IMG/VR virus record: IMGVR_UViG_3300023257_000007
Location: 62,001-126,000 of that record
DNA length: 64,000 nt
Direction: 5' to 3' (one strand)
In this document: piece by piece, positions 113-56,981 of the stretch
Layout of the letters: each line of letters opens with the position of its first letter
Position numbering within the stretch: the first letter of the stretch is position 1
Translations under genes and position numbers: made by a program
Notes under the pieces: generated by a model
What the model was told of the DNA's origin: nothing
The model's input: only the letters and a program-made list of their open reading frames with translations
Databases searched by the model: none

Positions 113-649
113 TTATTCTGCATAAAATCTACTCCTCAAAATCATTTTAGAATTATTAATATCTACTAAATCTAACGCTATACTTGACACTATTGCATAA
201 GGTTTAAATAATTTCATATTAATAAGTTTCTCATTAATTTTTTCTACAGTTTCCTCAATTAATAAATTTTCTAAATCTGCAATAATATCTATTCCAACGT
301 GTCTTAAATCTTCTACCTCATTCATTGGTATTATAATAGAAAATTGATATGTCTCTGTCATATGTTTCATATCAACTGCTCTCTGCATAGGTTCTACTTT
401 AATACCATCTAAATTTAATTTAGAAAGTATCTTTATGGATATTGGTAATGTGTTATCTATTTCAGTCACATATTTATTATAAATAGGATTTTCAATATCT
501 CTTGATATATAGGAATTTTTATTCATATCTCTCATTGCATGATATTCAGCATATATAGACATCCATTCCAAATCTTTCTCTTTTATATCTAAATTTTCAA
601 GTACTGGTTTCCATTTATTAATTGATCTTACTTTATCAATATGTTCCAT
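113..649 (-). CDS. Hypothetical protein; N-terminal KWKPVLE resembles the KW.PIL motif of T4-like capsid protein N-termini
   Basis: 178-aa ORF, AT-rich codon use, overlaps the clamp-loader stop by 1 nt (TAATG); motif resemblance only. Confidence 0.6.
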   Translation of the reverse strand: MEHIDKVRSINKWKPVLENLDIKEKDLEWMSIYAEYHAMRDMNKNSYISRDIENPIYNKYVTEIDNTLPISIKILSKLNLDGIKVEPMQRAVDMKHMTETYQFSIIIPMNEVEDLRHVGIDIIADLENLLIEETVEKINEKLINMKLFKPYAIVSSIALDLVDINNSKMILRSRFYAE

Positions 650-11568: not shown

Positions 11569-12636
11569 TTGATTAGTTACTTCGGAGGAAAAGCAAAAAT
11601 GGGTGAGTGGATATATCCATTTATTCCAAAAAACATTAAAACATACGTAGAACCTTTTTCAGGTGCTTTTTGGATTTATTTTAATACAAAAAATGATTTC
11701 ACACATTGTGATAAAGTTGTATATAACGATATTAACAAATATATGTTAAATCTTATGTATTGTGCTAAAGATCATCAAAAATTACTTGCAAAAATTGAAA
11801 GTGAGTTAAAACCAGGTGGATTTTTATACAATCCACACAAATTTAAAACACCAGAATATAAACAAGTTTATAAAGATTTGTATTATGAATATAAACATTG
11901 TAGAGATAAAAATAAATTCTTAGAAGATCCTATTTTTGAAATAGGTGACTATGATGCAGCAGTTAAATATGCATTTTTAATAACTTCAGCGTTTAATGGT
12001 TGTTTTCCTAAAGCTGCAGGTTTTTCAGGTATTGCAACCAATGGAAAATATAAATTACAAACATTTATTAATAAACTAAATAAAAAAGCAATTCAAGAAA
12101 AACTTGAAAGTATCACAGACTTTGAATTATTTGATTTTGAAGATTTAATTAAAAAATATGATAGTGAAGAAACTTACTTCTATTTAGATCCACCTTATTT
12201 CGATCCAAAAGGTAAAAGACTTGATTGGTATGGTGTTAAAGATGATAGTATGTTTGGTGTTGGTGGTCATGAAAGATTAGCTAATTTATTACAAAATACT
12301 AAAGCAAAATGGTCTCTATCTTACTATAATTATCCACAATTAGAAAAATGGTATCCAAATACAAAATACAATTGGGAATCTAAAGATTTCTTTAGAAGTT
12401 CTGCTTCTTTTTCAGACAACAAAGATGTGAAAGGAACTGAAATATTGATAATGAATTATAACTTTGAAGAGGAAGAGTATAAAAATAAGATGAAAAAATC
12501 TATACCTACAATAAAAGAAAAATTTAAAGATTGTACTGAAGAAGAATTTCCAAATAGAGAAAACGATAAAATATTACTCAACAAATTAAAAGATATTGGT
12601 GATAAAATGAACGAAAACGATGACTTCTGGAACTAA
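11569..12636 (+). CDS. dam: DNA adenine methyltransferase (Dam/D12 class)
   Basis: ISYFGGK, YVEPFSG, VYNDIN, YFYLDPPY, HERLA, TEILIMNY; TTG start. Confidence 0.9.
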   Translation: MISYFGGKAKMGEWIYPFIPKNIKTYVEPFSGAFWIYFNTKNDFTHCDKVVYNDINKYMLNLMYCAKDHQKLLAKIESELKPGGFLYNPHKFKTPEYKQVYKDLYYEYKHCRDKNKFLEDPIFEIGDYDAAVKYAFLITSAFNGCFPKAAGFSGIATNGKYKLQTFINKLNKKAIQEKLESITDFELFDFEDLIKKYDSEETYFYLDPPYFDPKGKRLDWYGVKDDSMFGVGGHERLANLLQNTKAKWSLSYYNYPQLEKWYPNTKYNWESKDFFRSSASFSDNKDVKGTEILIMNYNFEEEEYKNKMKKSIPTIKEKFKDCTEEEFPNRENDKILLNKLKDIGDKMNENDDFWN

Positions 12637-17362: not shown

Positions 17363-18055
17363 TTAACACATTTTCAATTTTTTAATTATATCACTAATAG
17401 TGCCTTTTGAAGCACAAAAATATTCAGCAATTTTAACTTGTTTAATATTTTGATTAAAATACATATCATAAACTTTTTCTCTATCAATTTTTGGTTGTTT
17501 ATATTTCAAATTATTAGATTTTTCTATAATTTCATCAAGATTTTCGTAGAAAAATTTTGAATCTGTATGTTTTATTGTGTGACAATTTCTACATATTATT
17601 TTACATTTATCTAATTCATTTTGTACTTTTTCACTCAAATCTTTTATACTATCAAATCTACTAGTTATATCACTTAAAATAAAATCCTTATTTCTTTCAT
17701 GATGAAAATTTAATGACGAATTACATTTATTATATCCACATATATAACATTTATCATCACCTAAATATTTTAAATAAATGTGTTTGTTGTGTCTCTTATT
17801 AGAAACTTTGCCAATTTTTTCATGTAATTCTTGATGACAATTTTGACAATATAATTCACACTTTTTTAACTCTTTCTCTATTATATTCCAGCTATAATTT
17901 CTTAAAACATTTAATGATTCTTTTTTATCATCTATATGATGAAAACACAATTTTAATATATTATCTTCACCACACATTTTACAAGAACCACCAAGTAATT
18001 TAACTGCTTTGTACTTTTTAGCAAAAACTAATATTTTTGTTGATAATTTTTTCAT
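17363..18055 (-). CDS. Double-HNH homing endonuclease-like protein with C-terminal HTH, inserted in the tRNA cluster
   Basis: Two CxxC..L.FHH..C...CxNCH..H units plus QVKIAEYF..SKGTISDII; real start is the ATG at 18055 (the track's 18100 start runs through a palindrome). Confidence 0.85.
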   Translation of the reverse strand: MKKLSTKILVFAKKYKAVKLLGGSCKMCGEDNILKLCFHHIDDKKESLNVLRNYSWNIIEKELKKCELYCQNCHQELHEKIGKVSNKRHNKHIYLKYLGDDKCYICGYNKCNSSLNFHHERNKDFILSDITSRFDSIKDLSEKVQNELDKCKIICRNCHTIKHTDSKFFYENLDEIIEKSNNLKYKQPKIDREKVYDMYFNQNIKQVKIAEYFCASKGTISDIIKKLKMC

Positions 18056-18104
18056 GTTCGAGGTTTTAATTTTATATATTAAAATTAAAACCTCGAACAT
18101 GAAA
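18050..18104 (-). promoter_or_regulatory. Perfect 25-bp hairpin with late promoter TATATA at the apex; stem includes the HNH start codon
   Basis: tttcatgttcgaggttttaatttta / taaaattaaaacctcgaacatgaaa, 5-nt loop tatat. Confidence 0.85.
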
Positions 18105-21844: not shown

Positions 21845-22534
21845 TTAATAATTCATTATTAATAGTTCTTCGTGATAAGAATATTTTTTCTTAACGATGT
21901 TACAGAATTTAGAGTATTCTGGTACTAGATAAAAATCATAACAAGATAACATGAACTTACCTTTAATGTTTTTTAATAAGAAAAATAAATCTTCATGTGA
22001 TTCCTTTGTAAAATCATGATTATCGTATCTATGTTCAAAACCATAATACGGTGGGTCAATATAGAAAAATGTATTTCTATAATCGAATTTATTTATCACA
22101 TATTTATAATCTTCGTTTAATACGTAATTTACATATTGATATTTATCTTTAAAATCTGATATATTACCCCAAGACATTTTATCACTATAACCAGATCCAA
22201 TATCTCCAACCGCATTACAATGACATAATAAATATAAATATTTCAAAGATTTTTCTTGTTGAGTTCCTTCATTAATAGTGTCTTTAAATTCAAGATATTT
22301 TTCTTCACTTGATTCTATATTCTCAATTAGATTTGTAAAATGTGGGTTTTTTAAGTGTCGAAATAAATAATAATTATCTTTATTAATATCATTATATACA
22401 CTAATAAGAGGATTGTTAATTGACAATCCTATTCCATACATACCACCAAAAGGTTCAACATAACATGTAAAGTTAGGTGTGTAAGGCAAAATGAATTTTT
22501 TAAATTTGGATTTTTCTCCAAGATAGGGTATCAT
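21845..22534 (-). CDS. Second, compact Dam-like DNA adenine methyltransferase
   Basis: IPYLGEK, YVEPFGG, VYNDIN, FFYIDPPY, FMLS, ELLIMNY. Confidence 0.85.
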   Translation of the reverse strand: MIPYLGEKSKFKKFILPYTPNFTCYVEPFGGMYGIGLSINNPLISVYNDINKDNYYLFRHLKNPHFTNLIENIESSEEKYLEFKDTINEGTQQEKSLKYLYLLCHCNAVGDIGSGYSDKMSWGNISDFKDKYQYVNYVLNEDYKYVINKFDYRNTFFYIDPPYYGFEHRYDNHDFTKESHEDLFFLLKNIKGKFMLSCYDFYLVPEYSKFCNIVKKKYSYHEELLIMNY

Positions 22535-23974: not shown

Positions 23975-24952
23975 TTAAAATTTTCTATTTTTAATATAGT
24001 TGGTGAAATTGAAAGATTGATCTTCTTTATCATCTATCATCTCTTTGGTGATATCAATTTCATTTACTTTATCAAATTCTAATTTCTCTTGAAAAAAATG
24101 TTCTGACGCATCTTTACATTCACTAGAAATGTAAGTCATTGATGGTATAGACCTCATCAAGAAGAATTTTTGTAACATTCTACCAGTTTTTAAACCAACT
24201 TTATCATCATCACAAAAAATATTTATTTTAGAAGGTTCCAATAATAATAATTTATATAATTGTAAACCTGACCACATAGCAGAAGACACTGACACTGATT
24301 TTAAATCCTGTTCAGATAATGCATACATATCAAATATTCCTTCAGTTATCCATATCTCGTCACCTTTATTAATTTTATCAGAATTATAAACATCTAATTC
24401 AGGACAAGATTGAGTATATTTCAATTTACCAATATCTGATATTTTTCTAGTTGTTATATTTTTAAGAATACCATTTTCATATAAGGGAATAACAATACCT
24501 CCACCTTCTAAACCATCATCTAAGATTGGTTTTAATAATGGATGACATGTTGCACCAATTTTAATAAGCGCATCTTCGTCTTTTATGTGTGATAGGGAGG
24601 ATAATTTATATTTTTTGATAAGATTTTCATTGATACCACGGTCAATTAACCATTGATATTCAAAATTCTTTGATAATAAGTGTTGGTGAGATTCTTCTAC
24701 AAGTTCTGTGTATTTTTGTAGGTCTTGGATGGAATAATTTATGTCTTCTGCTTGTAAATTCAATTCATCTGAATTCACTTCAATTGTTTTATGTTCGTCG
24801 AATTGACTTTTAATAAAACTAAATTGTTTTTCTATTTCTATTAATTCAGGACTATATTCTGTCCAATCAACAAAGTTGAGTAGAACACCTTCTAGTGACC
24901 TATTATTGAATAGTATAAAGTGTAATTCTTCTACACTATATTTATTTTTCAA
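23975..24952 (-). CDS. DNA primase-like TOPRIM protein
   Basis: WLIDRGI, IVIPLY, R...KLKY, WITEGIFD, IFCDDDKVG, CKDASE; TTG start overlapping the upstream stop (TTGA). Confidence 0.8.
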   Translation of the reverse strand: MKNKYSVEELHFILFNNRSLEGVLLNFVDWTEYSPELIEIEKQFSFIKSQFDEHKTIEVNSDELNLQAEDINYSIQDLQKYTELVEESHQHLLSKNFEYQWLIDRGINENLIKKYKLSSLSHIKDEDALIKIGATCHPLLKPILDDGLEGGGIVIPLYENGILKNITTRKISDIGKLKYTQSCPELDVYNSDKINKGDEIWITEGIFDMYALSEQDLKSVSVSSAMWSGLQLYKLLLLEPSKINIFCDDDKVGLKTGRMLQKFFLMRSIPSMTYISSECKDASEHFFQEKLEFDKVNEIDITKEMIDDKEDQSFNFTNYIKNRKF

Positions 24953-34478: not shown

Positions 34479-36200
34479 TTAATTCAAAAAACCATTTTTT
34501 AAAATACCCCACTCAAAACATATATGACCAGAATTATTTATTCTGTAAATACCCCTTTCTAACATTATATCATGCTCTGTTCTATTTGCATCATAACCAT
34601 CTTTAACCAATGTTTGTTTTCTATAATTATATCTATGCCTTCTAACACCATCAACTATGTAATGATAACCTGGTTTTGTTGTGTGACTCCTATTAAAATT
34701 TAAATTATCATAAAGATTGCCTTTACTCCAACTTCTATCAGCATAAGAAACTATTTTTTTCGGATCATAATTTTTAATAAAATATTTAAACAATTTACTA
34801 GCACCACCAACAATATTTGTGTTTAATTTGTTGCAAAACCTTAATAACTCAAAATCATATTTTTTAATAACACCTATACCCAATCTATTCTTACCAAACG
34901 TCATTAAAGAAACTAATTCATTTTCATAATATAATCCTAATTTAACACTAGATCCAACAAAACCTTGTATATGATTATTATCTAAAAATTCTCTTATTAG
35001 TTTATTATCGTTAATTTCCTTTATTTGTGTTTTTCTAGCATAAATTTTATTTGGTGTTTTACCTAATTTATTTAATATCATTGATTTAACTATATTTTGT
35101 TTATATTTCCAATCATCTTCATAAATATGGATTAATTGAATATCCTTTTCTTCACATTTTTCTGTTTTATTTAAATGATATCTATCAGATTTATATAATT
35201 CATTATGCCAATATAAACCATTAAATTCAAAAGCTAATTTTAAATCTGGTAAATAAATGTCTAATTCTAATGGCTTTATTATATTTCTTTTATTATTTAA
35301 AATTGTTTTGTCATAATTCGATTTAATATAATTTAAGAAATCAATTTCAAGTCCAGAAACTGATTTTAAAATAGGATTGCATTTAGTACATAACAAAGTA
35401 TTAGATCTTCGTCTACTATTCAAAAGAACATAACTTATTTCAAATTCGTGTCCTTTTTCACACATCATTAAATATTTTTTTTCTTCTAAATTTAAACTTA
35501 TTACATCATAATCTTCATAATATTTTAAATATTTATTCATGATTGTTTTTCTTAAACTTTTAATCATTCTGTCTTTTAAATCAATATTATGTAATGGTAC
35601 AATCACACCATATTTTTCTTTCATTGTTCTTTGTCTTTTAATTTTAACTAAATCCAATTTTGAAACATTATCAACTCCATATTTACTCAAACACGTTTCT
35701 TTATATCTATTATAAATTTCAACTGATTTTAATGGACTACTGACATTATAATTATCCTTTAGTGTTTTTAAAGATTTTTTATGAATTTCTTCATTTTGAA
35801 TAGGTGAATTATAACCATATTTTTTAATATTAGTTTTGATAATCTTTTCTTTTACTAAAATATTTTCTGATGGTGTTTTTGTACCAAATTTATCTAAACA
35901 TGTTTGCATTCTTTTATTTTTAACATGATTACTTTTATTCATGCATTTCTTAGAACAAAAAGTATAATATCCAATATTAGAATTCTTAAATTTGACAAAA
36001 TTACCACATTCACATATTACAATATTTTTAATATCATTATACCAATGATAAACTTGTTGCTTAAATGGTAAATCATCTAAACCATTTTCAATTACATATT
36101 TTTGTATTTCTTCTAGTATACTAGTAAAATACTTTTCGAGATAATTCTTTCTGAACATTTTACCAGATGAATCTAGATTTTCACTAAAAATACTTTTCAT
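34479..36200 (-). CDS. Putative homing endonuclease (CL.KYG repeats plus Hef/Vsr-like PD-(D/E)xK and GNAT-like C-terminal part)
   Basis: CECG..YTFCSKKC, CLDKFG/CLSKYG repeats, ELDIYLP..AFEFNGLYWH, IHIYEDDW, FL..NHIQG, ELLRFC, GGASKL, SYADR. Confidence 0.85.
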   Translation of the reverse strand: MKSIFSENLDSSGKMFRKNYLEKYFTSILEEIQKYVIENGLDDLPFKQQVYHWYNDIKNIVICECGNFVKFKNSNIGYYTFCSKKCMNKSNHVKNKRMQTCLDKFGTKTPSENILVKEKIIKTNIKKYGYNSPIQNEEIHKKSLKTLKDNYNVSSPLKSVEIYNRYKETCLSKYGVDNVSKLDLVKIKRQRTMKEKYGVIVPLHNIDLKDRMIKSLRKTIMNKYLKYYEDYDVISLNLEEKKYLMMCEKGHEFEISYVLLNSRRRSNTLLCTKCNPILKSVSGLEIDFLNYIKSNYDKTILNNKRNIIKPLELDIYLPDLKLAFEFNGLYWHNELYKSDRYHLNKTEKCEEKDIQLIHIYEDDWKYKQNIVKSMILNKLGKTPNKIYARKTQIKEINDNKLIREFLDNNHIQGFVGSSVKLGLYYENELVSLMTFGKNRLGIGVIKKYDFELLRFCNKLNTNIVGGASKLFKYFIKNYDPKKIVSYADRSWSKGNLYDNLNFNRSHTTKPGYHYIVDGVRRHRYNYRKQTLVKDGYDANRTEHDIMLERGIYRINNSGHICFEWGILKNGFLN

Positions 36201-36284: not shown

Positions 36285-39200
36285 TTATAAAAATCCACCG
36301 GATTCTATATCACCTTTTTTCAGAATTGTAATGTTATTAACAATTATACCCATTCCTTTAATGATTTCAATATATGTATCTAATACACCCATTTGAAGAT
36401 CAATTATGTAATTTGTATTATTTGTTATATCCATTACATTTTTGTAATCGTATAATGCATCTGAATCTTGTAATGATTTGCAAATCTCATCAGCTCTGAA
36501 CTTAATTTCAGCTCTAATTTCAGGAGTATTAAATCTCCATTGGTATCTTAGTAACATATCATATAACTGATTCTCTAGTTCAATTAACACTTCTCTTGAG
36601 TGAATAACACTTAGTGAACTGTAAGGGAATACTTGAGCAGTATTTTCAGAATTAATGCAGTAACCTGCATTTCTCTTATATGTTATTGGATTTGCACCCA
36701 TTTGGAACATGTTTTCTAAATCAGTATTACTGAAGTCCATTTCTGTTCCACCGATACCGTTAACTCTACCATTAGTTACACCAGCCATAATTGTCCAAGG
36801 TTGTAATCCTGGACCACCAGTAAACTTCTGCATATAAGTTGTAGCAGCGTATGATGAAGGTGGTACATATTTAGGTACACCATTATCACTTACTCTAACA
36901 TATGGGAAGAAATATCCAACACATGTTGCACCAACTCCACCAGCGAAGTCATATAAGTAAGGAGGACTAAGGTCTTCATTACCACCTTTCATTATGAAAT
37001 ATGTACTAACTGCACCTGTTTGTTCACCAGCAGCATCAACTTCCATGAAGTTAGGATTTACAGACTTTTTGAAGTCTCTAAGACTTGGCATATTTATGAA
37101 GCCTAAGCAGTTTAATTTTTCACCACATAAGTCAACTAATTGTTGTTTTGGAATGACATTAGATGAAACACCACCTACACTAACACTATAAGGAGCTAAA
37201 CCTAAACCAAATGAATCAACTAAATATCTCCATGTGATTTTATTTTTATTTACTAAAGCTTTAGATAAATTTGTTGTACTATCTAATACTGTTAAAATTG
37301 TATTTTGTCTAGCGTCAGTGCCATCAGGCATTGATAAACTACTAATCTTAAATGGTCTTATATCAATTCCTTTATATGTTGAAACGTAACTATCAATACT
37401 TGAATATTGAGTTGTCATCCAATCTGCTGTTGTTGCTGTAGCACTTGGTATGGCATCATTATCAGTTATCTTTATTGAAGCATCTGTTTCAATTATTTTC
37501 AATGTACTATCACTAGGATCTACTGTTGTATTTAAAATTCTAGTTAACCTTTTAGGTACTCTACCATTTGAATATAAACCAGTACTTGAATTATAAGTAG
37601 CATCTGGATCTGTAGGATCAGTTGTTGGAATATAAGCTTCTAACATATCACCACGTTTTAGTTCAGCATATCTTGTTCTATCTACTTTAATAGTTAAAAC
37701 ATTTGCTGGATAATTACTAGTAACAAAACTTTCAATTTCTACTGTTTGTCTATAACTTCCAATATCTGATACAACTGATAAAGCATAAGCATATATTGTA
37801 CTCCAATTATAAACTGGATCTGGATCACTTGAACCAGCAGAACTTGCATTTTCTACGAAATCAACTGTTAAGTTATCAGATGAATCAATCCACATCTTAA
37901 GATAAATCTTATTAGTCGAAGCATTTGCATCTACAAAGTAATCATCGTTAGCTATTTCACCGCTATAGAAATCTAAATACATTGTTGAGTATTTAGCTAC
38001 GACACCTGCTGCATTCTCACCTGTTATACCAGAAGTACTTAAAGTTTCAAGTGGTGCGTCTATTGTAATCATTCTATCTGTGGAATTTGTAGCGTGCATT
38101 ACGAACTCGTCATCTGTATAGAATATTAATATCTCACTACCATTATAAAATTCGGCAGGATTTGTAATATTTGTTAATGTTATTGTATAAGGATCATCAG
38201 TTATCACGTAATTTGTACTAATTTGATGTTTGTATCCTGTTCCACTATTAATAATAACTGCTTTATTATTTGCTAGAGTAGTTGATAATTCATCATGATA
38301 TTGTAATTCTCTTACTGAATTATAACTTGTTCCTGTCGCATTAGGGAATGTTAATGTTAATGTGCTATTTGGAGTACTATGTTCGATAGTTAATCCCATT
38401 GTTTGATAAACATTACTTAAAACTATTGGATTATAAGTTGATGTTGTGGTACCACTAACATATAGAAGTTCTACATATCCTAAAACAATAGCAGAAGTGT
38501 TACTAAATGTTGGTTGTGCAAGAGCACCTGGTGTGCTTTCTGTACCTTCATATGTTAATATATCTTCTGAACCTTTCAACATATAAACTACATCAACTCT
38601 ACCTACTGTAGAACCTGTAGTAACCAATGTTAATGGCTCGAATTGAACTGTTGTTGTACCCGTGTCTAATGTTTGTTTTGTGTCTGCAACAAAATATGGA
38701 TCAGCACCAAATGAAAAGGCTTGATTATTTATTGTTGCTAAAACATCTGTTGTTATAGTTATTCCAGAAACTGCAGTTCCATTAGGATCTAATAATGTGA
38801 AATTATTAATACCAGGAGCAGAAACTGAAGGATATACTACTGTATATTCTAAAGTAGAATCAACACCAGTGAATGATTTATTGAATGTTATGGTTGCACC
38901 ATTTATACTTGTGATAGCACTTACTACTGTAGAAGATGCCAATGTATCACCACTTACAATACTCGTAATGTAAAGATTTTCAAATGATGTATCACCTGTG
39001 ACAACATCATTAACATACCAGTTTGTGAATCCACCTGTTGTTCTACCGTAACTAGCATTCCATGCAGCTGTTAAATCTGCATCATAATTAGCAAAAACGT
39101 TTGATTCTGCATCTAAGAACTTATTAGCCAATGATACAGTTTCTGTAACTGATTGGTTATATGACATAAAATTAATACTATCTAATTGAGTACCAACTAA

Positions 39201-40163
39201 TCCGTCACCAATTATATCAATTTTACCGTTTGGATAATCTGCACTCATTAATAAATCTTCATTATATGAGCAGAAAATACCTGTTTTATCTGTGTCTGCA
39301 TTAATATTACTCTTAATGTAAAGATCTCTATTATTTAAATCTCTAAAGTAAGGTAATAGTGATGTATCATAATATCCTAATATTGTTATGTTAGTTTCAG
39401 ATATGAAATCACTAACTGTTCCTTTAATTAAACCTGTAGTATCAAAATAAGAACTCCATGTTGTATCAACTGATAATGAATTATAATCTGTCCAATCACC
39501 TTCAACTATAATAACTGTAACTAAATAATCTGAAATCCAGTCAGTTGGATTAATATAAGTAGGAACTTTAGTTCTACCACCATACCACCATTCGGCAGTA
39601 ACATCAAATCCTGTTAAACTTGATTTAAACATAAATACTGTAACAGCCTTGTTGTTAAGGTTTGTAAAATTAAGTAATCTATCATCTGACCATGTTGTTA
39701 GACTCTTAAGATAATCTTGGAATGCAATATCATCTCTTTCCCAGAAATCTTGTCTATTGAATATCTTACTATATGGTATAGTAACTTTTGTACCTTGTGA
39801 AGTTGGATAGTTTGCATATTGAGATGCAACTGACATTGAATCATATTCAATTAGATCTCTCGTATCATTAGTTGACAGTAAATTAAGTGCCCAAATCGGA
39901 CCACTCTGTAACATTTTTAAACATGTTCTGTGGAAATAAGAACCTTTGTTTTCTAATTGTCTATCTAAATCACCGAACACAGTTGCAAACGTAGTTGGAT
40001 TGTCTATATAAACTGGCTTATTGATAGGCCCTTTCTTTGAAAAACCTGGTACTAGATTTATAAGAATATCTTGTACTGGTAACTCAATAGGTGACTGATT
40101 TATTTCTTCTATGAAAATGTCAGGTCTTTTATATTTTCCTAAATCTTTTTGTTGAATTGGCAT
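36285..40163 (-). CDS. Contractile tail sheath protein (gp18-like), enlarged to 1292 aa
   Basis: N-terminal RPDIFIEE..VPGFSKKGP.NKP; C-terminal WTIMAGVTNGR, ANPI, HSREVL..LE, YQWRFNT..R; TATATA at 40186-40191. Confidence 0.9.
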   Translation of the reverse strand: MPIQQKDLGKYKRPDIFIEEINQSPIELPVQDILINLVPGFSKKGPINKPVYIDNPTTFATVFGDLDRQLENKGSYFHRTCLKMLQSGPIWALNLLSTNDTRDLIEYDSMSVASQYANYPTSQGTKVTIPYSKIFNRQDFWERDDIAFQDYLKSLTTWSDDRLLNFTNLNNKAVTVFMFKSSLTGFDVTAEWWYGGRTKVPTYINPTDWISDYLVTVIIVEGDWTDYNSLSVDTTWSSYFDTTGLIKGTVSDFISETNITILGYYDTSLLPYFRDLNNRDLYIKSNINADTDKTGIFCSYNEDLLMSADYPNGKIDIIGDGLVGTQLDSINFMSYNQSVTETVSLANKFLDAESNVFANYDADLTAAWNASYGRTTGGFTNWYVNDVVTGDTSFENLYITSIVSGDTLASSTVVSAITSINGATITFNKSFTGVDSTLEYTVVYPSVSAPGINNFTLLDPNGTAVSGITITTDVLATINNQAFSFGADPYFVADTKQTLDTGTTTVQFEPLTLVTTGSTVGRVDVVYMLKGSEDILTYEGTESTPGALAQPTFSNTSAIVLGYVELLYVSGTTTSTYNPIVLSNVYQTMGLTIEHSTPNSTLTLTFPNATGTSYNSVRELQYHDELSTTLANNKAVIINSGTGYKHQISTNYVITDDPYTITLTNITNPAEFYNGSEILIFYTDDEFVMHATNSTDRMITIDAPLETLSTSGITGENAAGVVAKYSTMYLDFYSGEIANDDYFVDANASTNKIYLKMWIDSSDNLTVDFVENASSAGSSDPDPVYNWSTIYAYALSVVSDIGSYRQTVEIESFVTSNYPANVLTIKVDRTRYAELKRGDMLEAYIPTTDPTDPDATYNSSTGLYSNGRVPKRLTRILNTTVDPSDSTLKIIETDASIKITDNDAIPSATATTADWMTTQYSSIDSYVSTYKGIDIRPFKISSLSMPDGTDARQNTILTVLDSTTNLSKALVNKNKITWRYLVDSFGLGLAPYSVSVGGVSSNVIPKQQLVDLCGEKLNCLGFINMPSLRDFKKSVNPNFMEVDAAGEQTGAVSTYFIMKGGNEDLSPPYLYDFAGGVGATCVGYFFPYVRVSDNGVPKYVPPSSYAATTYMQKFTGGPGLQPWTIMAGVTNGRVNGIGGTEMDFSNTDLENMFQMGANPITYKRNAGYCINSENTAQVFPYSSLSVIHSREVLIELENQLYDMLLRYQWRFNTPEIRAEIKFRADEICKSLQDSDALYDYKNVMDITNNTNYIIDLQMGVLDTYIEIIKGMGIIVNNITILKKGDIESGGFL

Positions 40164-40191: not shown

Positions 40192-40306
40192 TTAAATATA
40201 TTTTTCGAATTATCTTCAACTATTATATATAAAGTTGAAAATGTAACAAATTTCGTAAAATAAAATAGGTAGGATTTTCATTACCATCCGTATTTTTAAT
40301 TATATA

Positions 40307-41497
40307 TTAAATTAAATTTCTCAAATGATAATTGAAAACTAACTTAACCTCTTCTGAATATTTTTTTGGATATACTACAGAATCATGAATAGTAAAGATC
40401 TTAATGTGTGGATATTTCTTTGCAATATCGCTCACAACCTTACCATAAATAAAATCACTTTCCATTCTCTGCAATTTATGACTCAACGATTTATAAGTAT
40501 CGTCTAAACTTTTTAATTCTTTTATATACTCTAAAACACTCGGGTATAATTCACCAAAAATGTTATTTTCTCTGTTTCCATTATTATTTCCAAATAAAAC
40601 CTTAAACATCATCAACTTAGCATCAGTCCTTGTTTTAAGTTCAAGTGGAAATCTTTCAGTAAATTCATCATATATTAAACCATTTTTAACAATATCAATA
40701 AATCTTATAACTTCTTCATTTAATTCATCTATCTCTTGTTTTAAATATAAACCAAAAAAGAAAGGTTGTGAATTTTTAATATCAACTTCATCAACAGGCT
40801 CACCATCAATCTTCAAAAATCTATTTCTAATTTCTTTTTTAAGTATCGTAAAATTAGTGTGCATTCTACCATAACCATCAAATTTAAAAAATATATTGCC
40901 TGTTTGTATTCCATCGACACTATTATGATTACGTAAATATTTACTATTCTCCATTTCACCATTTTCCCATAAATCATCAATATAATCTATCGACTTTTGA
41001 TAATCTATCTGTACATAATATAAATAATCAATTAATTTCTTTCTAATTTCAATATCTATTGGACTATTAACATAGGTTGTAAATGATCTCTCTAAATAAT
41101 CCTTTTGATATTTTTTCATTAAGATTTTATCATCAACCACACATTTAGTTATTTCTAAGTCTGTTATATTTAATTTATATGTTTTGGCTTTTTTTGAAAC
41201 ATAATAATTAGAGACCAAAGTCATAAATCTTTTTTCAATTAAATAATTAATATAATAATTATAATATTTTCCATATTTATTTCTTAATAATACAGACCAT
41301 AAATTAAATTTAACTTCATTAGTAAAAAAATATTTTATTACTAACTCATGAATTATATTTATTAAGTAATCTGTTTTTAAATTAATACCATTATATGGTA
41401 TCTTCTTTATTCCAGTTAAATATTCATATTCTTTTGGAATAAATTGATATAAATATTGTCTATCTTTTGGTAAAATTATATTTGTTTTATGGAACAT
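40307..41497 (-). CDS. Minimal family-A (PolA-fold) polymerase-like protein without exonuclease domains
   Basis: YGRMHT, VDIKNSQP (motif A), RTDAKLMMFKVLFG (motif B), HKLQRMESD, TIHDSV (motif C). Confidence 0.7.
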   Translation of the reverse strand: MFHKTNIILPKDRQYLYQFIPKEYEYLTGIKKIPYNGINLKTDYLINIIHELVIKYFFTNEVKFNLWSVLLRNKYGKYYNYYINYLIEKRFMTLVSNYYVSKKAKTYKLNITDLEITKCVVDDKILMKKYQKDYLERSFTTYVNSPIDIEIRKKLIDYLYYVQIDYQKSIDYIDDLWENGEMENSKYLRNHNSVDGIQTGNIFFKFDGYGRMHTNFTILKKEIRNRFLKIDGEPVDEVDIKNSQPFFFGLYLKQEIDELNEEVIRFIDIVKNGLIYDEFTERFPLELKTRTDAKLMMFKVLFGNNNGNRENNIFGELYPSVLEYIKELKSLDDTYKSLSHKLQRMESDFIYGKVVSDIAKKYPHIKIFTIHDSVVYPKKYSEEVKLVFNYHLRNLI

Positions 41498-41606
41498 TAA
41501 TGAAATTATTTTTTCTTTTGAATTTAAATTATTATTTTAGAAAAGTTTATGGTTAAATTCTTAAGATGCATCAAAAGCTATTTCCACATGAAACGAAGAT
41601 TTGGTG

Positions 41607-41614
41607 CAAAATTA
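41607..41614 (-). promoter_or_regulatory. Possible Bacteroidota-type -7 promoter element TAnnTTTG
   Basis: TAATTTTG in an intergenic region upstream of the PolA-like gene; short motif in AT-rich DNA. Confidence 0.35.
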
Positions 41615-41692
41615 TGATAGTATTCTAATTAATTAATTTTTTTCTTTAAGAAAATTTTCTTATTTTAGAAGAACATTAAAACGAAAAAAATT

Positions 41693-42283
41693 ATGGATGA
41701 AAATATAAAAAAATCATTAGAATCTTTAAGTAAATCTATTTGTTCAAAACTTGTAGATAAAAATATAAATTTAGATGAATTAATTTCTAATCATTTATCA
41801 ACTATTAAATTGCTTTATCCTGATGTTGAAAATTTAGAAAAAATATTTACTGATATTGTTCTTAAAGAATCAAAAAAGTATTATGAATCAAAGAAATTTA
41901 AAGTAAGATGTATAAAAACACATAATACATTTTCACATAAATATAATAGAGGTTCAATTTATACTGTAATTGATGAATTTAAACAAGTTGGTATACATAA
42001 TAATGATGATGAAGAACATTATTATAAAATTAAAGATGATAATAATAAAATTGTATTAGTTGAGCCAAATCATTTTATTAAAATTGAAGATGAAGAAAGT
42101 TTAGCAGATATGAAAATAGAATATGTAGATGATGAATTAATAATTTCTACTTATGATGGACAAGCATTAAAAATAGAAAGAAAAAATATTGATATTTTTT
42201 TAAGAGAATTACATAAATATTCTTCATCGTATATTAAAAATGATAAATTAGAAAAAACTTTAATATTTTTTGAAAGTAAATAA
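41693..42283 (+). CDS. Hypothetical protein
   Basis: 196-aa ORF. Confidence 0.7.
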   Translation: MDENIKKSLESLSKSICSKLVDKNINLDELISNHLSTIKLLYPDVENLEKIFTDIVLKESKKYYESKKFKVRCIKTHNTFSHKYNRGSIYTVIDEFKQVGIHNNDDEEHYYKIKDDNNKIVLVEPNHFIKIEDEESLADMKIEYVDDELIISTYDGQALKIERKNIDIFLRELHKYSSSYIKNDKLEKTLIFFESK

Positions 42284-46597: not shown

Positions 46598-47194
46598 ATG
46601 GGAAAAAATAAACATGAAGTCAAATTCAAAGAAGCAACTGGACAAGAATTTTCTAAATTTTATCAAGATCAAATGCCTAGATTAACTTGGCATCTTTCAA
46701 ATTATACAAAAGATTTTGAAGTAGCAGAAGATTTTGCAAATGACGCATTTGAACAAGCCTTAAAAAAAATTGAAACTTATGATAAAAATAAGTCTCAAAT
46801 TCAAACTTGGTTATACACAATTGCTAGACACATTGTTATTCAATCTTGGAATAAAAAGCAAAAAATGCCATCCGTCTCAATTGATAAAGAATATGACGTA
46901 AACCTTTCATTAAGTACTTTTTTACCTTATGAAGATGGAAAAGAAGATTTAGAAAAGTATAATACTTATGTTGAAAAGGCTAAGATTATAAAAGAAGTTA
47001 TTAAAAATCTTCCTCCTAAATACAAAGAAGTCATGGAATTAAGAGAATTAGATAATATGCAATATAAGGAAATTGCGAAGTATCTTAAGAGAAACGAATC
47101 TACTGTTAAATCTCAAATTCGAAAAGGACGTGAATTAATAAGAGATAAAGTGCAGAAAAAATTCGATTACATTGATAAACATGGACTGGAATAA
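46598..47194 (+). CDS. ECF-type sigma-70 family RNA polymerase sigma factor
   Basis: Region 2 AEDFANDAF..A..KI.TYD..TWLYTIARH; region 4 LPPKYKEVMELR..YKEIA.YL..ESTVKSQIRKGRELI. Confidence 0.92.
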   Translation: MGKNKHEVKFKEATGQEFSKFYQDQMPRLTWHLSNYTKDFEVAEDFANDAFEQALKKIETYDKNKSQIQTWLYTIARHIVIQSWNKKQKMPSVSIDKEYDVNLSLSTFLPYEDGKEDLEKYNTYVEKAKIIKEVIKNLPPKYKEVMELRELDNMQYKEIAKYLKRNESTVKSQIRKGRELIRDKVQKKFDYIDKHGLE

Positions 47195-55162: not shown

Positions 55163-55495
55163 ATGAAAAGATTTGACGAAAAAAAACATATATTAGAACA
55201 ATATCAACAAATGATAAATAGCTTCGATAAATTACAAATCATTTCAATTTATCTCAAATATATCATTGATAATGTTGAAACTGATAAAGATCTTTTAGAA
55301 TTAGACTTAGATTTACCAATCTTAAATAATCAATTTTCAATTGATGGAGATAAAATATACAGATTTCAACTTGAAATAGATAAACTGTTTAATAAACTAA
55401 AAATAAACAAAAATATAAAAATAGATGATGCAAGATTCATCGAAATTAGTAAAAGATTATTAGAATATGCAAAATCAAAAGACGAAGCCGCTTAA
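55163..55495 (+). CDS. Hypothetical protein
   Basis: 110-aa ORF. Confidence 0.65.
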   Translation: MKRFDEKKHILEQYQQMINSFDKLQIISIYLKYIIDNVETDKDLLELDLDLPILNNQFSIDGDKIYRFQLEIDKLFNKLKINKNIKIDDARFIEISKRLLEYAKSKDEAA

Positions 55496-56981
55496 TGTTG
55501 ACTTAAGTAAAATCATTAAGAAAGAAAACGCACATCCACTACTAGAAAACGCAATTATTAGAATGATATCAACATCACACTTACCATATTACGGTGAGTT
55601 TGCTCTTTTTGTTACATTCATTGAAGCAAAAATAGGAACATGTGGTGTAAGTGTTAATAAAAACGGTAATATGATATTTTATTGGGATCCTGAATGGGTC
55701 TCAAAACAATCAATGGGTTCTACTATATTTGTAATGGTACATGAAATTTTTCATTTATTATTTTCACATATTAAAAGGACAGTAGGTTATAATAAGAATC
55801 TATCTAATGTTGCACAAGATATGATTATTAATTCAATTATATATTCAGATCTTATGTTAGGTGAAAAATTGGGACCTGGTTATGAAAATTTTATAGAAGT
55901 TCCACTAGATGATGATGGTAAAAACACAGCATTATTTGTACCTAAAGAATATGATGGACCTTGGGTATTTGAATCTTTATATAAATGGTTGAAAGAAGAA
56001 TATAAAGAATGGAAAGAAGAAAATTCGGACAAATGTAATGACGGAAAATTAACCATTAATGTTGACAAAGATGGTAATATGACTATGCCTGGAAAAGAAG
56101 ACGAAGGTGGTGAACAAGAAGAAGATGGTGAAAATGGAGATCAAGAAAGTGGAAATGAAAAGGGTAAAGAAAAACTAGATTCAACTGGTAAGCCAATATA
56201 TGGTCCTTATGCTGAATCAGATTACCAAGATCAAAAAAGTGGTGAAAAAAGACACACAGACATTGATTGTTATTCTAAAGAACATATTTTTGAAGGTTTA
56301 GAAAGTAGTAAAGGTTTAACATTGGATTGTCACTTTGATGATGAAGTACCAGAAGAAATAAGAAGAGAAGTTGTAAATAGTGTAATGCAAAACCTTAAAA
56401 ATAGAGGTTTAGAAACATCAGATATTGCCGAAACATTAAGAAAACTTCAAAAATCTGAAAAAGATTATCTTAAATATATTAAAAGAAGTTTAAGTCACCA
56501 TGTATTTGGTACTAAAAAAATGAAATCTATCACCAAACCAAATCGTAGAGGTATCTGGGGATTAAAAGGCAATAGAAAATATAAAACAAAAATCAATTGT
56601 ATTTTAGATACATCTGGTTCTATGAGTGGTGAATTTGAAAAAGCTCTAGCTTATATTTTTCAAAATGATATTTCAGTTAACCTTATACAATGTGATACAG
56701 AAGTAAAAGATTTTATTGAAGTGACCGACAAAAATCAACTTAATCAAATGGAAATTAAAGGTTTAGGTGGCACAACACTAACACCAGGTATAAAATATAT
56801 TGCAAATAATAAAGATTTAAATAAATTAAATACAGTTATTCTTACAGATGGATATGTTGATCAATTAGATTTTACAGGTGTAAAAGGAAAAGTTTTGATT
56901 ATATCAAATTCTGTTGAATGTCCTATATTAAAATCAAACAATAAAATTAAGCAGATTATTATTGATAAGTCAAATGATTAA
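55467..56981 (+). CDS. HExxH metallopeptidase-like + vWA protein (DUF2201-like)
   Basis: VHEIFHLLFSH..R, N.AQD..IN, acidic linker, ILDTSGSM, IQCD, GLGGT.L, ILTDG. Confidence 0.85.
   Translation: MQNQKTKPLNVDLSKIIKKENAHPLLENAIIRMISTSHLPYYGEFALFVTFIEAKIGTCGVSVNKNGNMIFYWDPEWVSKQSMGSTIFVMVHEIFHLLFSHIKRTVGYNKNLSNVAQDMIINSIIYSDLMLGEKLGPGYENFIEVPLDDDGKNTALFVPKEYDGPWVFESLYKWLKEEYKEWKEENSDKCNDGKLTINVDKDGNMTMPGKEDEGGEQEEDGENGDQESGNEKGKEKLDSTGKPIYGPYAESDYQDQKSGEKRHTDIDCYSKEHIFEGLESSKGLTLDCHFDDEVPEEIRREVVNSVMQNLKNRGLETSDIAETLRKLQKSEKDYLKYIKRSLSHHVFGTKKMKSITKPNRRGIWGLKGNRKYKTKINCILDTSGSMSGEFEKALAYIFQNDISVNLIQCDTEVKDFIEVTDKNQLNQMEIKGLGGTTLTPGIKYIANNKDLNKLNTVILTDGYVDQLDFTGVKGKVLIISNSVECPILKSNNKIKQIIIDKSND

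What the first reader, a model, noticed from the sequence alone, without database searches (positions are those of the whole stretch)
40307..41497. Stripped-down family-A polymerase fold (396 aa) beside the tail sheath gene
Seen: motifs corresponding to PolA motif 2 (YGRMHT), A (DIKNSQP), B (R..AK...F..LFG), the Q-helix (LQRMESD) and C (IHDS). No 3'-5' or 5'-3' exonuclease motifs; about 130-aa N-terminal helical domain; motif B Tyr-Gly is Phe-Gly. Inference: too small for a replicase; it could be a repair or primer-processing enzyme, a specialised nucleotidyltransferase or single-subunit RNAP-like enzyme, or a DNA-binding derivative.
Basis: partly seen in the sequence, partly recalled or inferred. 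Interest (0 to 1): 0.6.

Follow-up and report, generated by a model that had tools for sequence, protein, structure and literature searches.

The report
Compact winged-helix family-A polymerase of megaphages
A 396-residue gene of a very large, uncultured phage encodes a pared-down DNA-polymerase-I-type enzyme with no proofreading domain and a DNA-binding-type winged-helix domain in front; it belongs to a very large, unnamed phage family related to the recently described "divPolA2" polymerases, and its function has never been tested.

Summary
The ORF lies on the minus strand (40307-41497, 396 aa), directly upstream of a 1292-aa tail sheath gene, in a 25% GC huge phage related to the 595-735 kb "uncultured phage" genomes LR7565xx.

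Pfam, PHROGs, NCBIfam and PDB sequence searches find nothing. The evidence for a family-A polymerase comes from other routes:
- **Profile alignment:** a comparison with diverse PolA domains gives 95.8% probability, E 8e-9. It aligns D239=D705, R290/K294=R754/K758, F302-G303=Y766-G767, Q343=Q849 and HDS371-373=HDE881-883 (E. coli Pol I numbering).
- **Conservation:** these residues are invariant or nearly so across 70 relatives of 25-50% identity.

Residues 1-130 form a winged-helix-like domain, not an exonuclease. The family is very large (6189 clusters at 50% identity) and detectably related to divPolA2 (Yutin et al. 2024).

The phage also has a family-B polymerase, a DnaG-type primase and a sigma factor. 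The enzyme is therefore most likely an auxiliary DNA polymerase. An RNA polymerase or primase-polymerase role is not excluded.

The parts
40307..41497 (-). Whole gene: 396-aa compact family-A-type polymerase (P0001), 47.8 kDa, including the stop codon at 40307-40309
   Evidence: ORF list and translation. 893 homologs in the word-index search and 6189 cluster representatives in the exhaustive profile search, nearly all of those listed 350-460 aa plus shorter fragments.
41135..41452 (-). N-terminal winged-helix-like domain (residues 16-121); residues 1-130 have pI 9.5
40901..41104 (-). Short helical thumb-like region (residues 132-199; four helices)
   Evidence: Secondary structure of the model. 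It lies inside the range aligned to PolA polymerase domains (model 128/132..396). No residue-level mapping was available.
40847..40888 (-). Beta-hairpin with the D207-x-x-G210-R211 motif (FKFDGYGRMHTNFT), equivalent to the T/DxxGR motif (motif 2) of PolA and T7-type enzymes
   Evidence: Strands 204-206 and 212-214. D207, R211 and H213 are invariant; G210, T214, N215 and T217 are nearly so. A local match GRlHTNF to phage G20c Pol I is not significant.
40754..40801 (-). Motif A strand and start of the fingers (EPVDEVDIKNSQPFFF). D239 is the catalytic Asp. Q244 sits at the steric-gate position.
   Evidence: hhalign register D239=D705 and Q244=E710. D239 is present in 70/70 sequences and N242/S243/Q244/P245 in 66-67/70.
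40589..40630 (-). Motif B / O helix (RTDAKLMMFKVLFG): R290, K294, F298, F302, G303
   Evidence: hhalign register R754/K758/F762/Y766/G767. K294 70/70; R290 54/70 (Lys in 13); position 298 is Tyr 40 / Phe 26; F302 65/70.
40415..40492 (-). Q helix (residues 336-361) with L342, Q343, E346, S347
   Evidence: Q343=Q849. Q343 69/70 and E346 70/70.
40367..40396 (-). Motif C beta-hairpin (FTIHDSVVYP). D372 is the second catalytic Asp, flanked by H371 and S373.
   Evidence: H371-D372-S373 = H881-D882-E883. H371 and D372 70/70, S373 68/70. Strands 368-370 and 373-377.
41498..41692 (.). 195-bp AT-rich divergent intergenic region upstream of the gene; presumed promoter region, not mapped
   Evidence: The upstream neighbour 41693-42283 is on the + strand. 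The same arrangement, with the gene heading a transcription unit after opposite-strand genes, occurs in 4 of 5 relatives examined. The sigma-70 scan was no better than shuffles.
36285..40163 (-). Context only: 1292-aa tail sheath gene immediately downstream, after a 143-bp gap
   Evidence: phrog_34521 tail sheath, E 1.4e-82 on residues 898-1279. The adjacency is kept in relatives of 57-59% identity (L006, L181) but not at 51-53% identity (L005, L182, L183).

Best explanation
The gene encodes a catalytically competent, proofreading-free, compact polymerase of the family-A (Pol I / T7) superfamily.

Architecture:
- a basic winged-helix-like domain (residues 1-130);
- a short helical thumb (about 132-199);
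- a palm carrying the two metal-binding aspartates D239 and D372;
- reduced fingers with a complete O helix (R290, K294, F298, F302-G303).

The most likely chemistry is template-directed, primer-dependent DNA synthesis by the two-metal mechanism:
- R290 and K294 hold the incoming triphosphate.
- The aromatic residues at 298 and 302 stack on the sugar and the nascent base pair.
- R211 and Q343 read the minor groove at the primer terminus.
- Q244 occupies the place of the Glu steric gate.
- The winged-helix domain tethers the enzyme to duplex DNA or to a replisome or repair partner.

The phage replicates with a T4-type family-B polymerase and has its own DnaG-type primase. This enzyme is therefore probably an auxiliary DNA polymerase for gap filling, recombination-associated synthesis or damage/modified-base tolerance, not the replicase.

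What is shown: the fold, the motif register, the residue conservation, the domain make-up and the gene context. What is inferred: activity, dNTP preference, the role of the winged-helix domain and the biological role.

My confidence that it is an active PolA-superfamily nucleotide polymerase is about 0.85. My confidence in the full statement (DNA polymerase with an auxiliary role) is about 0.5.
For: Fold:
- Foldseek PDB hits are all family-A DNAPs, prob 1.0.
- In the exhaustive search, ranks 1-21 are all superfamily-A polymerases, followed by a drop to winged-helix hits.

Homology to DNA polymerases:
- hhalign of A2 against a diverse PolA alignment gives Prob 95.8%, E 8e-9, with every catalytic motif in register.
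- The low-diversity T7 RNAP alignment and N4 gp16 give nothing significant.

Active-site conservation:
- D207, R211, H213, D239, Y276, K294, E346, H371 and D372 are invariant over 70 sequences of 25-50% identity.

DNAP-like details (interpretation from established Pol I / T7 RNAP enzymology, from my own knowledge):
- Position 298 is aromatic (Tyr 40, Phe 26 of 70), as F762 in Klenow and Y526 in T7 DNAP. T7-type RNAPs have Met there.
- Position 302 is Phe in 65/70, lacking the hydroxyl that T7 RNAP Y639 uses to sense the 2'-OH.
- Q343 aligns with Klenow Q849.
- A bulky Gln (67/70) sits at the steric-gate position.

Context:
- A family-B polymerase piece lies next to a homing endonuclease in the same genome.
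- The window holds a DnaG/Toprim primase at 23975-24952 (phrog_47, E 1.6e-13).
- The window holds a sigma factor at 46598-47194 (phrog_1740, E 9e-25).
- The gene is single-copy in the 344.6-kb genome fragment.

Independent automatic annotations of relatives:
- 'Putative DNA polymerase I [uncultured marine phage]': 40% identity, TM 0.87.
- 'DNA-directed DNA polymerase family A palm domain-containing protein'.
Against: - No activity data exist for this family or for divPolA2.
- Motif C is HDS, as in T7-type RNAPs, rather than HDE. However, several phage PolAs also have HDS.
- The hairpin motif is the Asp form DxxGR, as in T7 RNAP.
- The canonical steric-gate Glu is absent, so sugar selectivity is uncertain.
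- The RNAP control alignment was of low diversity. Even the known PolA-T7 RNAP relationship was not detected with it, so the lack of an RNAP hit is weak evidence.
- No residue-level 3D superposition could be inspected. The geometry of the two Asp residues rests on profile alignment plus secondary-structure topology.
- The own genome is only about 48% complete, so absences in it mean little.
- No repair or replication gene is a conserved neighbour.
Confidence: 0.5

Rival explanations
1. It is a minimal single-subunit DNA-dependent RNA polymerase, functionally like phage N4 RNAP II or a cut-down T7 RNAP. The winged-helix domain supplies promoter or DNA recognition, and the enzyme transcribes a subset of phage genes.
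For: - The best, though non-significant, PDB profile hit is the N4 RNAP II large subunit: 404 aa, motifs B and C, E 0.66.
- The DxxGR hairpin and the HDS motif C are RNAP-like.
- The N-terminal domain is a basic, DNA-binding-type domain.
- The gene usually heads its own transcription unit.
- Yutin et al. 2024 raise the same possibility for the related divPolA2 (PMC11348598).
Against: - Motif B has Tyr/Phe where T7-type RNAPs have Met, and Phe where they have the 2'-OH-sensing Tyr (enzymology from my own knowledge).
- Gln rather than Gly or another small residue sits at the steric-gate position, and Q343 aligns with the DNAP Gln.
- Profile homology is significant to DNAPs but not to the T7 RNAP alignment or to N4 gp16. 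This is weak evidence because the RNAP control had low diversity.
- The phage encodes a sigma factor, which implies use of the host RNA polymerase.
- At 396 aa there is no room for the promoter-specificity loop or the N-terminal domain of T7-type RNAPs (inference).
Confidence: 0.2
2. It is a primase-polymerase in the manner of TV-Pol / CcPol-MP. The winged-helix domain replaces the OB-fold partner, positions the enzyme on template DNA or at an origin, and the enzyme starts DNA chains de novo.
For: - Minimal exonuclease-free PolA cores are proposed to act as prim-pols (TV-Pol; PMC2579912) or shown to do so (CcPol-MP; PMC10061031).
- In those systems an added DNA-binding module confers priming.
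- The best winged-helix matches include the origin- and replisome-associated WH domains of ORC/Cdc6, MCM8 and Rpa2.
Against: - The window itself encodes a DnaG/Toprim-type primase, and relatives have one too.
- No D5-like helicase, OB-fold partner, integrase, resolvase or transposase is a neighbour in six loci examined (for the window).
- The family profile finds nothing in the Ma-LMM01 record, which is reported to carry a TV-Pol. This is inconclusive because the TV-Pol gene there was not located.
Confidence: 0.15
3. It is a catalytically dead polymerase fold reused as a DNA-binding or structural protein, perhaps tail-associated because it sits next to the sheath gene.
For: - It lies directly upstream of the sheath gene, and this synteny is kept in relatives of 57-59% identity.
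- Pfam and PHROG models fail to recognise it.
Against: - Both catalytic Asp residues, the O-helix Lys and Arg, the hairpin Arg and the motif C His are invariant or nearly so over 70 sequences down to 25% identity. This pattern is expected only if the chemistry is under selection.
- The sheath adjacency is lost in relatives of 51-53% identity.
Confidence: 0.05

Closest known systems
divPolA2 (Yutin et al. 2024, Virol J 21:200, PMC11348598; representative AUR84708 of Vibrio phage 1.063.O)
   Same: - About 400-430 aa.
- PolA-type palm and fingers with conserved catalytic residues.
- No 3'-5' exonuclease; an extra N-terminal globular domain.
- Found in myovirus-type phages that also carry a regular family-B polymerase, in variable gene neighbourhoods.
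- Structural hits to both DNAPs and mitochondrial RNAPs.
- Profile-profile relationship Prob 79-86%, E 1.6e-5 to 5.6e-6 over about 170 columns, including the short hairpin-to-motif-A spacing and an 'L-x-IDG' element.
- divPolA2-type proteins of Barba31A and Aeromonas phages rank just below the own family and above canonical PolAs in the viral structure library.
   Different: - Sequence identity in the aligned part is 20% or less.
- The family HMM does not find AUR84708 in its genome.
- N-terminal domains are not detectably homologous (E 0.018 over 33 columns).
- divPolA2 motif B (RxxxKMIMTRIYY) and motif C (FDE) differ from RxxxKxxxYxVLFG and HDS here.
- This family is significantly similar to canonical PolA (E 8e-9), whereas divPolA2 is not (E 0.069). 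It sits between PolA and divPolA2.
- In GenBank phages it occurs only in 595-735 kb uncultured phages.
Family A DNA polymerases (E. coli Pol I Klenow, Bst, Taq, T7 gp5, Pol theta; Pfam PF00476)
   Same: - Motif A, B and C and Q-helix residues in register; two catalytic Asp; O-helix Arg/Lys.
   Different: - No hit to PF00476 at any threshold.
- No exonuclease or vestigial exonuclease domain; a winged-helix domain instead.
- About 270 aa against about 410 aa for the polymerase domain.
- The segment between the Arg hairpin and motif A is shorter: 28 residues from R211 to D239, against 37 from R668 to D705 (from and Pol I numbering).
- Gln for the steric-gate Glu, Phe for Y766, Ser for E883.
TV-Pol family and CcPol-MP primases (Iyer et al. 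2008, PMC2579912; Rice 2023, PMC10061031)
   Same: Minimal PolA core as defined there: short helical thumb, beta-hairpin with invariant Arg, RRM palm with two Asp, fingers with RxxxK; never linked to nuclease domains.
   Different: - No association with a D5-like helicase, OB-fold partner, resolvase, integrase or transposase.
- The N-terminal domain is alpha/beta winged-helix-like, not the all-helical domain described for a TV-Pol subset.
- Sequence membership could not be shown.
T7-type single-subunit RNA polymerases, including phage N4 RNAP II (PDB 6dt7) and mitochondrial RNAPs
   Same: - DxxGR hairpin and HDS motif C.
- The N4 RNAP II large subunit is of similar size (404 aa).
   Different: - No PF00940 hit; no significant profile similarity.
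- Motif B lacks the RNAP Met and Tyr.
- No specificity loop or T7-type N-terminal domain.

Membership tests
Family A polymerase superfamily (Pol I / T7 fold) | Right-hand thumb-palm-fingers fold of the Pol I type | tested here: met
   [not shown]
Family A polymerase superfamily (Pol I / T7 fold) | Two catalytic aspartates (motifs A and C) and the O-helix RxxxK | tested here: met
   D239=D705, D372=D882, R290/K294=R754/K758 in an hhalign alignment with Prob 95.8%, E 8e-9. D239, D372 and K294 are 70/70; position 290 is Arg 54 / Lys 13.
Canonical family A DNA polymerase (Pfam PF00476, Pol I-like) | Scores above the PF00476 gathering threshold | tested here: not met
   No Pfam hit at E <= 10 for P0001, and none for any of 70 relatives. 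No NCBIfam hit.
Canonical family A DNA polymerase (Pfam PF00476, Pol I-like) | N-terminal 3'-5' exonuclease domain, active or vestigial | tested here: not met
   Residues 1-130 fold as a winged-helix-like domain. All top matches are WH domains, with no DnaQ/RNase H-like match.
Canonical family A DNA polymerase (Pfam PF00476, Pol I-like) | Steric-gate Glu in motif A and Tyr-Gly at the end of motif B | tested here: not met
   Q244 (67/70) aligns with E710. F302 (65/70) aligns with Y766. G303 is kept.
Canonical family A DNA polymerase (Pfam PF00476, Pol I-like) | Template-directed dNTP polymerisation | not testable with these tools
   Needs a primer-extension assay.
divPolA2 (Yutin et al. 2024) | PolA-like palm and fingers with catalytic residues, no exonuclease, extra N-terminal globular domain, about 400-430 aa | tested here: met
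   compared with the description in PMC11348598.
divPolA2 (Yutin et al. 2024) | Encoded alongside a regular family-B polymerase, in a variable gene neighbourhood | tested here: met
   PolB piece in the own genome and in LR756502. Downstream neighbours: sheath in three loci including the window; histidine kinase, methyltransferase and an unknown gene in one each.
divPolA2 (Yutin et al. 2024) | Sequence-level membership (recovered by searches started from divPolA2) | tested here: inconclusive
   hhalign A2 vs A4: Prob 79-86%, E 1.6e-5 to 5.6e-6. But the word-index search from AUR84708 returned only 30 close relatives and none of this family. The A2 profile found nothing in MG592441. N-terminal domains are not detectably related.
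divPolA2 (Yutin et al. 2024) | No thumb homologous to other DNAPs | tested here: inconclusive
   Here helices 132-199 lie within the range aligned to PolA domains, but no residue-level mapping was available.
TV-Pol / CcPol-MP primase-polymerases | Linkage or fusion to a D5-like helicase, OB-fold SSB partner, or resolvase/integrase/transposase | tested here: not met
   None in the window or in the five other loci examined.
TV-Pol / CcPol-MP primase-polymerases | Sequence membership | tested here: inconclusive
   The A2 profile found nothing in Microcystis phage Ma-LMM01. The TV-Pol gene of that record was not located, and no TV-Pol alignment could be built.
T7-type single-subunit RNA polymerase (PF00940) | PF00940 match; motif B RxxxKxxxMTxxYG; promoter-specificity elements | tested here: not met
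   No Pfam hit. Motif B has Tyr/Phe298 and Phe302. hhalign to T7 RNAP alignments is not significant, though that control had low power.

The most novel reading that the evidence does not exclude
Probability: 0.2. Interest if true: 0.8.

Novelty: new variant of a known kind. Interest (0 to 1): 0.5.

Why it matters
The family is very large: 6189 clusters at 50% identity, 4113 of them with E <= 1e-10. It is invisible to Pfam, PHROGs and NCBIfam, and in GenBank phages it is confined to the largest known phage genomes.

At the sequence level it links canonical Pol I-type enzymes to the enigmatic divPolA2 group. It therefore helps to define the minimal functional core of family-A polymerases and how that core was remodelled in phages.

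A roughly 270-residue polymerase core with a Gln at the steric gate and Phe in place of the conserved Tyr is a natural experiment in sugar selectivity. A compact, exonuclease-free polymerase with a built-in DNA-binding domain could also be a useful reagent.

Biologically, it raises the question of why T4-like megaphages with a complete PolB replisome keep a second, stripped-down polymerase.

Tried and rejected
- **Single-sequence and family-HMM searches.** Pfam, PHROGs, NCBIfam and PDB gave nothing usable. The only PDB profile hits were non-significant: Fic protein, ribosomal L11, N4 RNAP II.
- **hhalign of the family profile against single reference sequences.** E. coli Pol I, T7 RNAP, T7 gp5 and N4 gp16 gave only short, non-significant but correctly placed local matches. 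A diverse PolA alignment was needed.
- **BLASTP against the Pseudomonas phage HRDY3 PolA** (pairwise E 6e-10). It aligned the C-terminal half correctly but put the query's motif A against HRDY3's motif B. I rejected that part of the alignment in favour of the profile register.
- **The sheath gene as a functional partner.** Rejected, because the synteny is not conserved beyond close relatives.
- **N-terminal domain as a degenerate exonuclease.** Rejected.
- **Promoter and terminator scan.** No better than shuffles in this AT-rich DNA.
- **TV-Pol comparison.** The profile found nothing in Ma-LMM01. A PF00476 search there found only its regular PolA. The paper gives no locus tag, so no TV-Pol alignment was built.
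- **The T7 RNAP alignment from IMG/VR.** It was of low diversity (62-100% identity) and failed even to detect PolA, so it is a weak control.
- **Unused tools.** Complex prediction was not used because no binding claim is made.
- **Supplements.** The tables of PMC11348598 were not held. I could not check whether the LR7565xx genes were already listed there.
Full report
**1. The observation**

Window 40307-41497 holds one uninterrupted ORF of 396 codons on the minus strand (protein P0001, 47.8 kDa).
- FDGYGRMHT, residues 206-214
- VDIKNSQP, residues 238-245
- RTDAKLMMFKVLFG, residues 290-303
- LQRMESD, residues 342-348
- IHDS, residues 370-373

The window has about 25% GC and is a piece of a 344.6-kb IMG/VR virus record, estimated 48% complete. 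At both DNA and protein level its nearest GenBank relatives are six unannotated 'uncultured phage' genomes of 595-735 kb (LR756501-04, LR745206, LR756511). The gene downstream on the same strand (36285-40163, 1292 aa) is a tail sheath (phrog_34521, E 1.4e-82). It is followed by a homing endonuclease and a baseplate hub.

**2. Sequence searches**

Pfam, PHROGs, NCBIfam and a PDB sequence search give no hit for P0001. The protein is nevertheless far from an orphan:
- The word-index search returns 893 homologs, and all 120 listed are 384-430 aa.
- The exhaustive profile search over 1.84 billion cluster representatives finds 6189 proteins at E <= 1e-3, 4113 at E <= 1e-10 and 478 at E <= 1e-30.
- None of 70 diverse representatives (25-50% identity to P0001; alignment A2) has a meaningful Pfam domain.
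- In GenBank phages the family is confined to the six huge uncultured genomes, whichever family member is used as the query.
- It is single-copy in the window's own genome.

**3. Fold**

An AlphaFold2 model built on 64 homologs is confident (pLDDT 87.8, pTM 0.77).
- Foldseek against the PDB returns only family-A DNA polymerases at the top: apicoplast Pol, KlenTaq, M. smegmatis Pol1, Pol theta (E about 1e-4, prob 1.0).
  - DNA polymerases: Aquifex Pol1 13.9, Klenow 13.2, apPol 13.1, T7 gp5 12.7, Pol theta 12.6, Pol nu 12.3.
  - RNA polymerases: yeast mtRNAP 13.6, T7 RNAP 12.7, human mtRNAP 9.9, N4 vRNAP 8.8, N4 RNAP II 8.0.
- Below these the list drops to winged-helix domains that match residues 21-120.

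The fold assignment is therefore firm. Fold alone cannot say whether the enzyme makes DNA or RNA.

**4. Residue register**

hhalign against single reference sequences gave only short local matches, correctly placed but not significant. I therefore collected diverse phage PolA polymerase domains from IMG/VR and built a 27-sequence alignment with E. coli Pol I, T7 gp5 and a jumbo-phage PolA. Compared with the family profile, this gives Prob 95.8%, E 8e-9 over 162 columns.

The register, in E. coli Pol I numbering:

| This protein | E. coli Pol I | Note |
|---|---|---|
| D239 | D705 | motif A |
| Q244 | E710 | steric-gate position |
| R290 | R754 | motif B |
| K294 | K758 | motif B |
| F298 | F762 | motif B |
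| F302 | Y766 | motif B |
| G303 | G767 | motif B |
| Q343 | Q849 | Q helix |
| H371-D372-S373 | H881-D882-E883 | motif C |

In the model, D239 ends a beta-strand (233-239) and D372 sits at the turn of a hairpin (368-370 / 373-377). This is the topology of the Pol I palm.

Conservation across the 70 diverse sequences:
- Invariant: D207, R211, H213, D239, Y276, K294, E346, H371, D372.
- At 65/70 or more: Q244 (67), F302 (65), Q343 (69), S373 (68), N242 (66), S243 (67), P245 (67).
- Position 298 is Tyr (40) or Phe (26).

This pattern says the chemistry is under selection.

The DxxGR hairpin ('motif 2') lies outside the significant alignment. Its assignment rests on topology and invariance.

**5. 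N-terminal domain**

- The domain is basic (pI 9.5, against 5.8 for the rest of the protein).
- A relative gives a weak Sso10a hit.

It is not an exonuclease.

**6. Context**

The phage has other replication and transcription tools:
- A family-B DNA polymerase segment next to a homing endonuclease, 17 kb upstream of the window. PolB pieces also occur in LR756502.
- A DnaG/Toprim-type primase inside the window at 23975-24952 (phrog_47, E 1.6e-13).
- A sigma factor at 46598-47194 (phrog_1740, E 9e-25).
- No canonical PolA, Pol III alpha or T7-type RNAP in the fragment. The last search had a silent control.

Neighbours of the polymerase gene vary. The sheath gene follows it in the window and in relatives of 57-59% identity (L006, L181). 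A histidine kinase, a D12 methyltransferase or an unknown gene follows it at 51-53% identity. In the window and in four of the five other loci it is the first gene after opposite-strand genes. The sheath adjacency is therefore inherited synteny, not a functional link.

**7. What it most likely does**

The protein has every part of a working family-A polymerase in about 270 residues, plus a DNA-binding-type domain. Several residue-level details lean towards DNA synthesis, judged against established Pol I and T7 RNAP enzymology (my own knowledge):
- An aromatic residue at the F762/Y526 position, where T7-type RNAPs have Met.
- Phe instead of the Tyr whose hydroxyl senses the 2'-OH in T7 RNAP.
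- Gln at the position of Klenow Q849.
- A bulky Gln at the steric gate.

Profile similarity is significant to DNA polymerases. With a PolB replicase, a primase and a sigma factor already present, an auxiliary DNA polymerase is the best reading. Gap filling, recombination-dependent synthesis and damage or modified-base tolerance are candidate roles.

I put about 0.85 on 'active PolA-superfamily polymerase' and about 0.5 on 'auxiliary DNA polymerase'.

The rivals:
- **Minimal RNA polymerase, about 0.2.** The fold tie with mtRNAP and T7 RNAP, DxxGR, HDS and the WH domain speak for it.
- **TV-Pol/CcPol-like primase-polymerase, about 0.15.** The resident primase and the lack of helicase or SSB linkage weaken it.
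- **Inactive derivative, about 0.05.** The invariant active site contradicts it.

**8. Comparison with what is known**

*TV-Pol and CcPol-MP.* Minimal PolA cores were first defined as the TV-Pol family (PMC2579912). One branch, CcPol-MP, is an experimentally shown primase (PMC10061031). The present protein fits their description of the core but not their gene contexts. Sequence membership could not be tested properly.

*divPolA2.* This is the closest described group (Yutin et al. 2024, PMC11348598). Its members are exonuclease-free, carry an unassigned N-terminal globular domain, occur in PolB-encoding phages in variable neighbourhoods, and are proposed to be either repair DNAPs or RNAPs.
- An alignment of 29 divPolA2 proteins matches the family profile at Prob 79-86%, E 1.6e-5 to 5.6e-6.
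- divPolA2-type proteins rank just after the own family in the viral structure library.
- However, identity is 20% or less, the motif B and C signatures differ, and the N-terminal domains are not detectably related.
- The family profile does not find AUR84708.

This family is clearly similar to canonical PolA (E 8e-9) while divPolA2 is not (E 0.069). It therefore bridges the two.

*Automatic annotations.* Pipelines have already labelled some relatives 'Putative DNA polymerase I' and 'family A palm domain-containing protein'.

I therefore rate it a new variant of a known kind: a distinct, very large, megaphage-associated branch of the minimal PolA-like polymerases, here with a winged-helix N-terminal domain.

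**9. Limits**

- No coordinates could be inspected, so the Asp geometry is inferred from alignment and topology.
- The RNAP control alignment had low power.
- The genome is incomplete.
- No experiment exists for this family or for divPolA2.

Noticed in passing
window 34479-36200 (-) and G000:C1:129035-132268 (L004): A 573-aa homing endonuclease (phrog_3339, E 2e-133; DUF7487) sits between the sheath gene and the next structural gene. A paralog (445 aa, phrog_3339, E 2e-124) lies directly beside a 337-aa fragment-sized family-B DNA polymerase ORF. This suggests the replicative PolB gene is split by a mobile endonuclease.
   Followed up: partly
window 36285-40163 (-): The tail sheath protein is unusually long (1292 aa). 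Only residues 898-1279 match the sheath PHROG, and the first 900 or so residues have no family assignment. Relatives carry 1304-1334-aa versions.
   Followed up: no
window 23975-24952 (-): A 325-aa DnaG/Toprim-type DNA primase (phrog_47, E 1.6e-13; Toprim_2 E 4.2e-4, below the Pfam cut-off).
   Followed up: partly
window 46598-47194 (+): A 198-aa RNA polymerase sigma factor (phrog_1740, E 9e-25), implying that the phage redirects the host RNA polymerase.
   Followed up: no
window 3936-6092 (+); also L006 and L181: A ClpB/Lon-like AAA+ 'ATP-dependent protease' of 718 aa (phrog_4871, E 1.6e-247). In relatives of 57-59% identity a 660-666-aa ClpB-like gene lies just upstream of the polymerase gene on the opposite strand. 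In this window it is 35 kb away, so the region has been rearranged.
   Followed up: no
window 11569-12636 (+), 21845-22534 (-), 17363-18100 (-), 55467-56981 (+): Two DNA methyltransferases (phrog_56) and two more HNH endonucleases. The window is rich in DNA-modification and mobile-nuclease genes.
   Followed up: no
window 40215-40239 (gap between the polymerase and sheath genes): An AT-rich inverted repeat, TTCAACT-N11-AGTTGAA, read by eye in the 143-bp intergenic gap. It could be a weak terminator or a regulatory hairpin. The terminator scan did not call it.
   Followed up: no
L015 680-1267 and L006 4476-4994: An SprT-like metalloprotease gene lies immediately upstream of a distant family member (P0268) and 3 kb from another (P0006). 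This may be a loose link to DNA-protein crosslink repair. It was not seen in the window.
   Followed up: no
LR756502.1 121542-121919 (-): The best family-B polymerase match in this 642-kb relative contains one in-frame TAG and one TAA. This may reflect a split gene, an intron or intein, or stop-codon recoding as reported for Lak phages. The window's own ORFs read cleanly under table 11.
   Followed up: no
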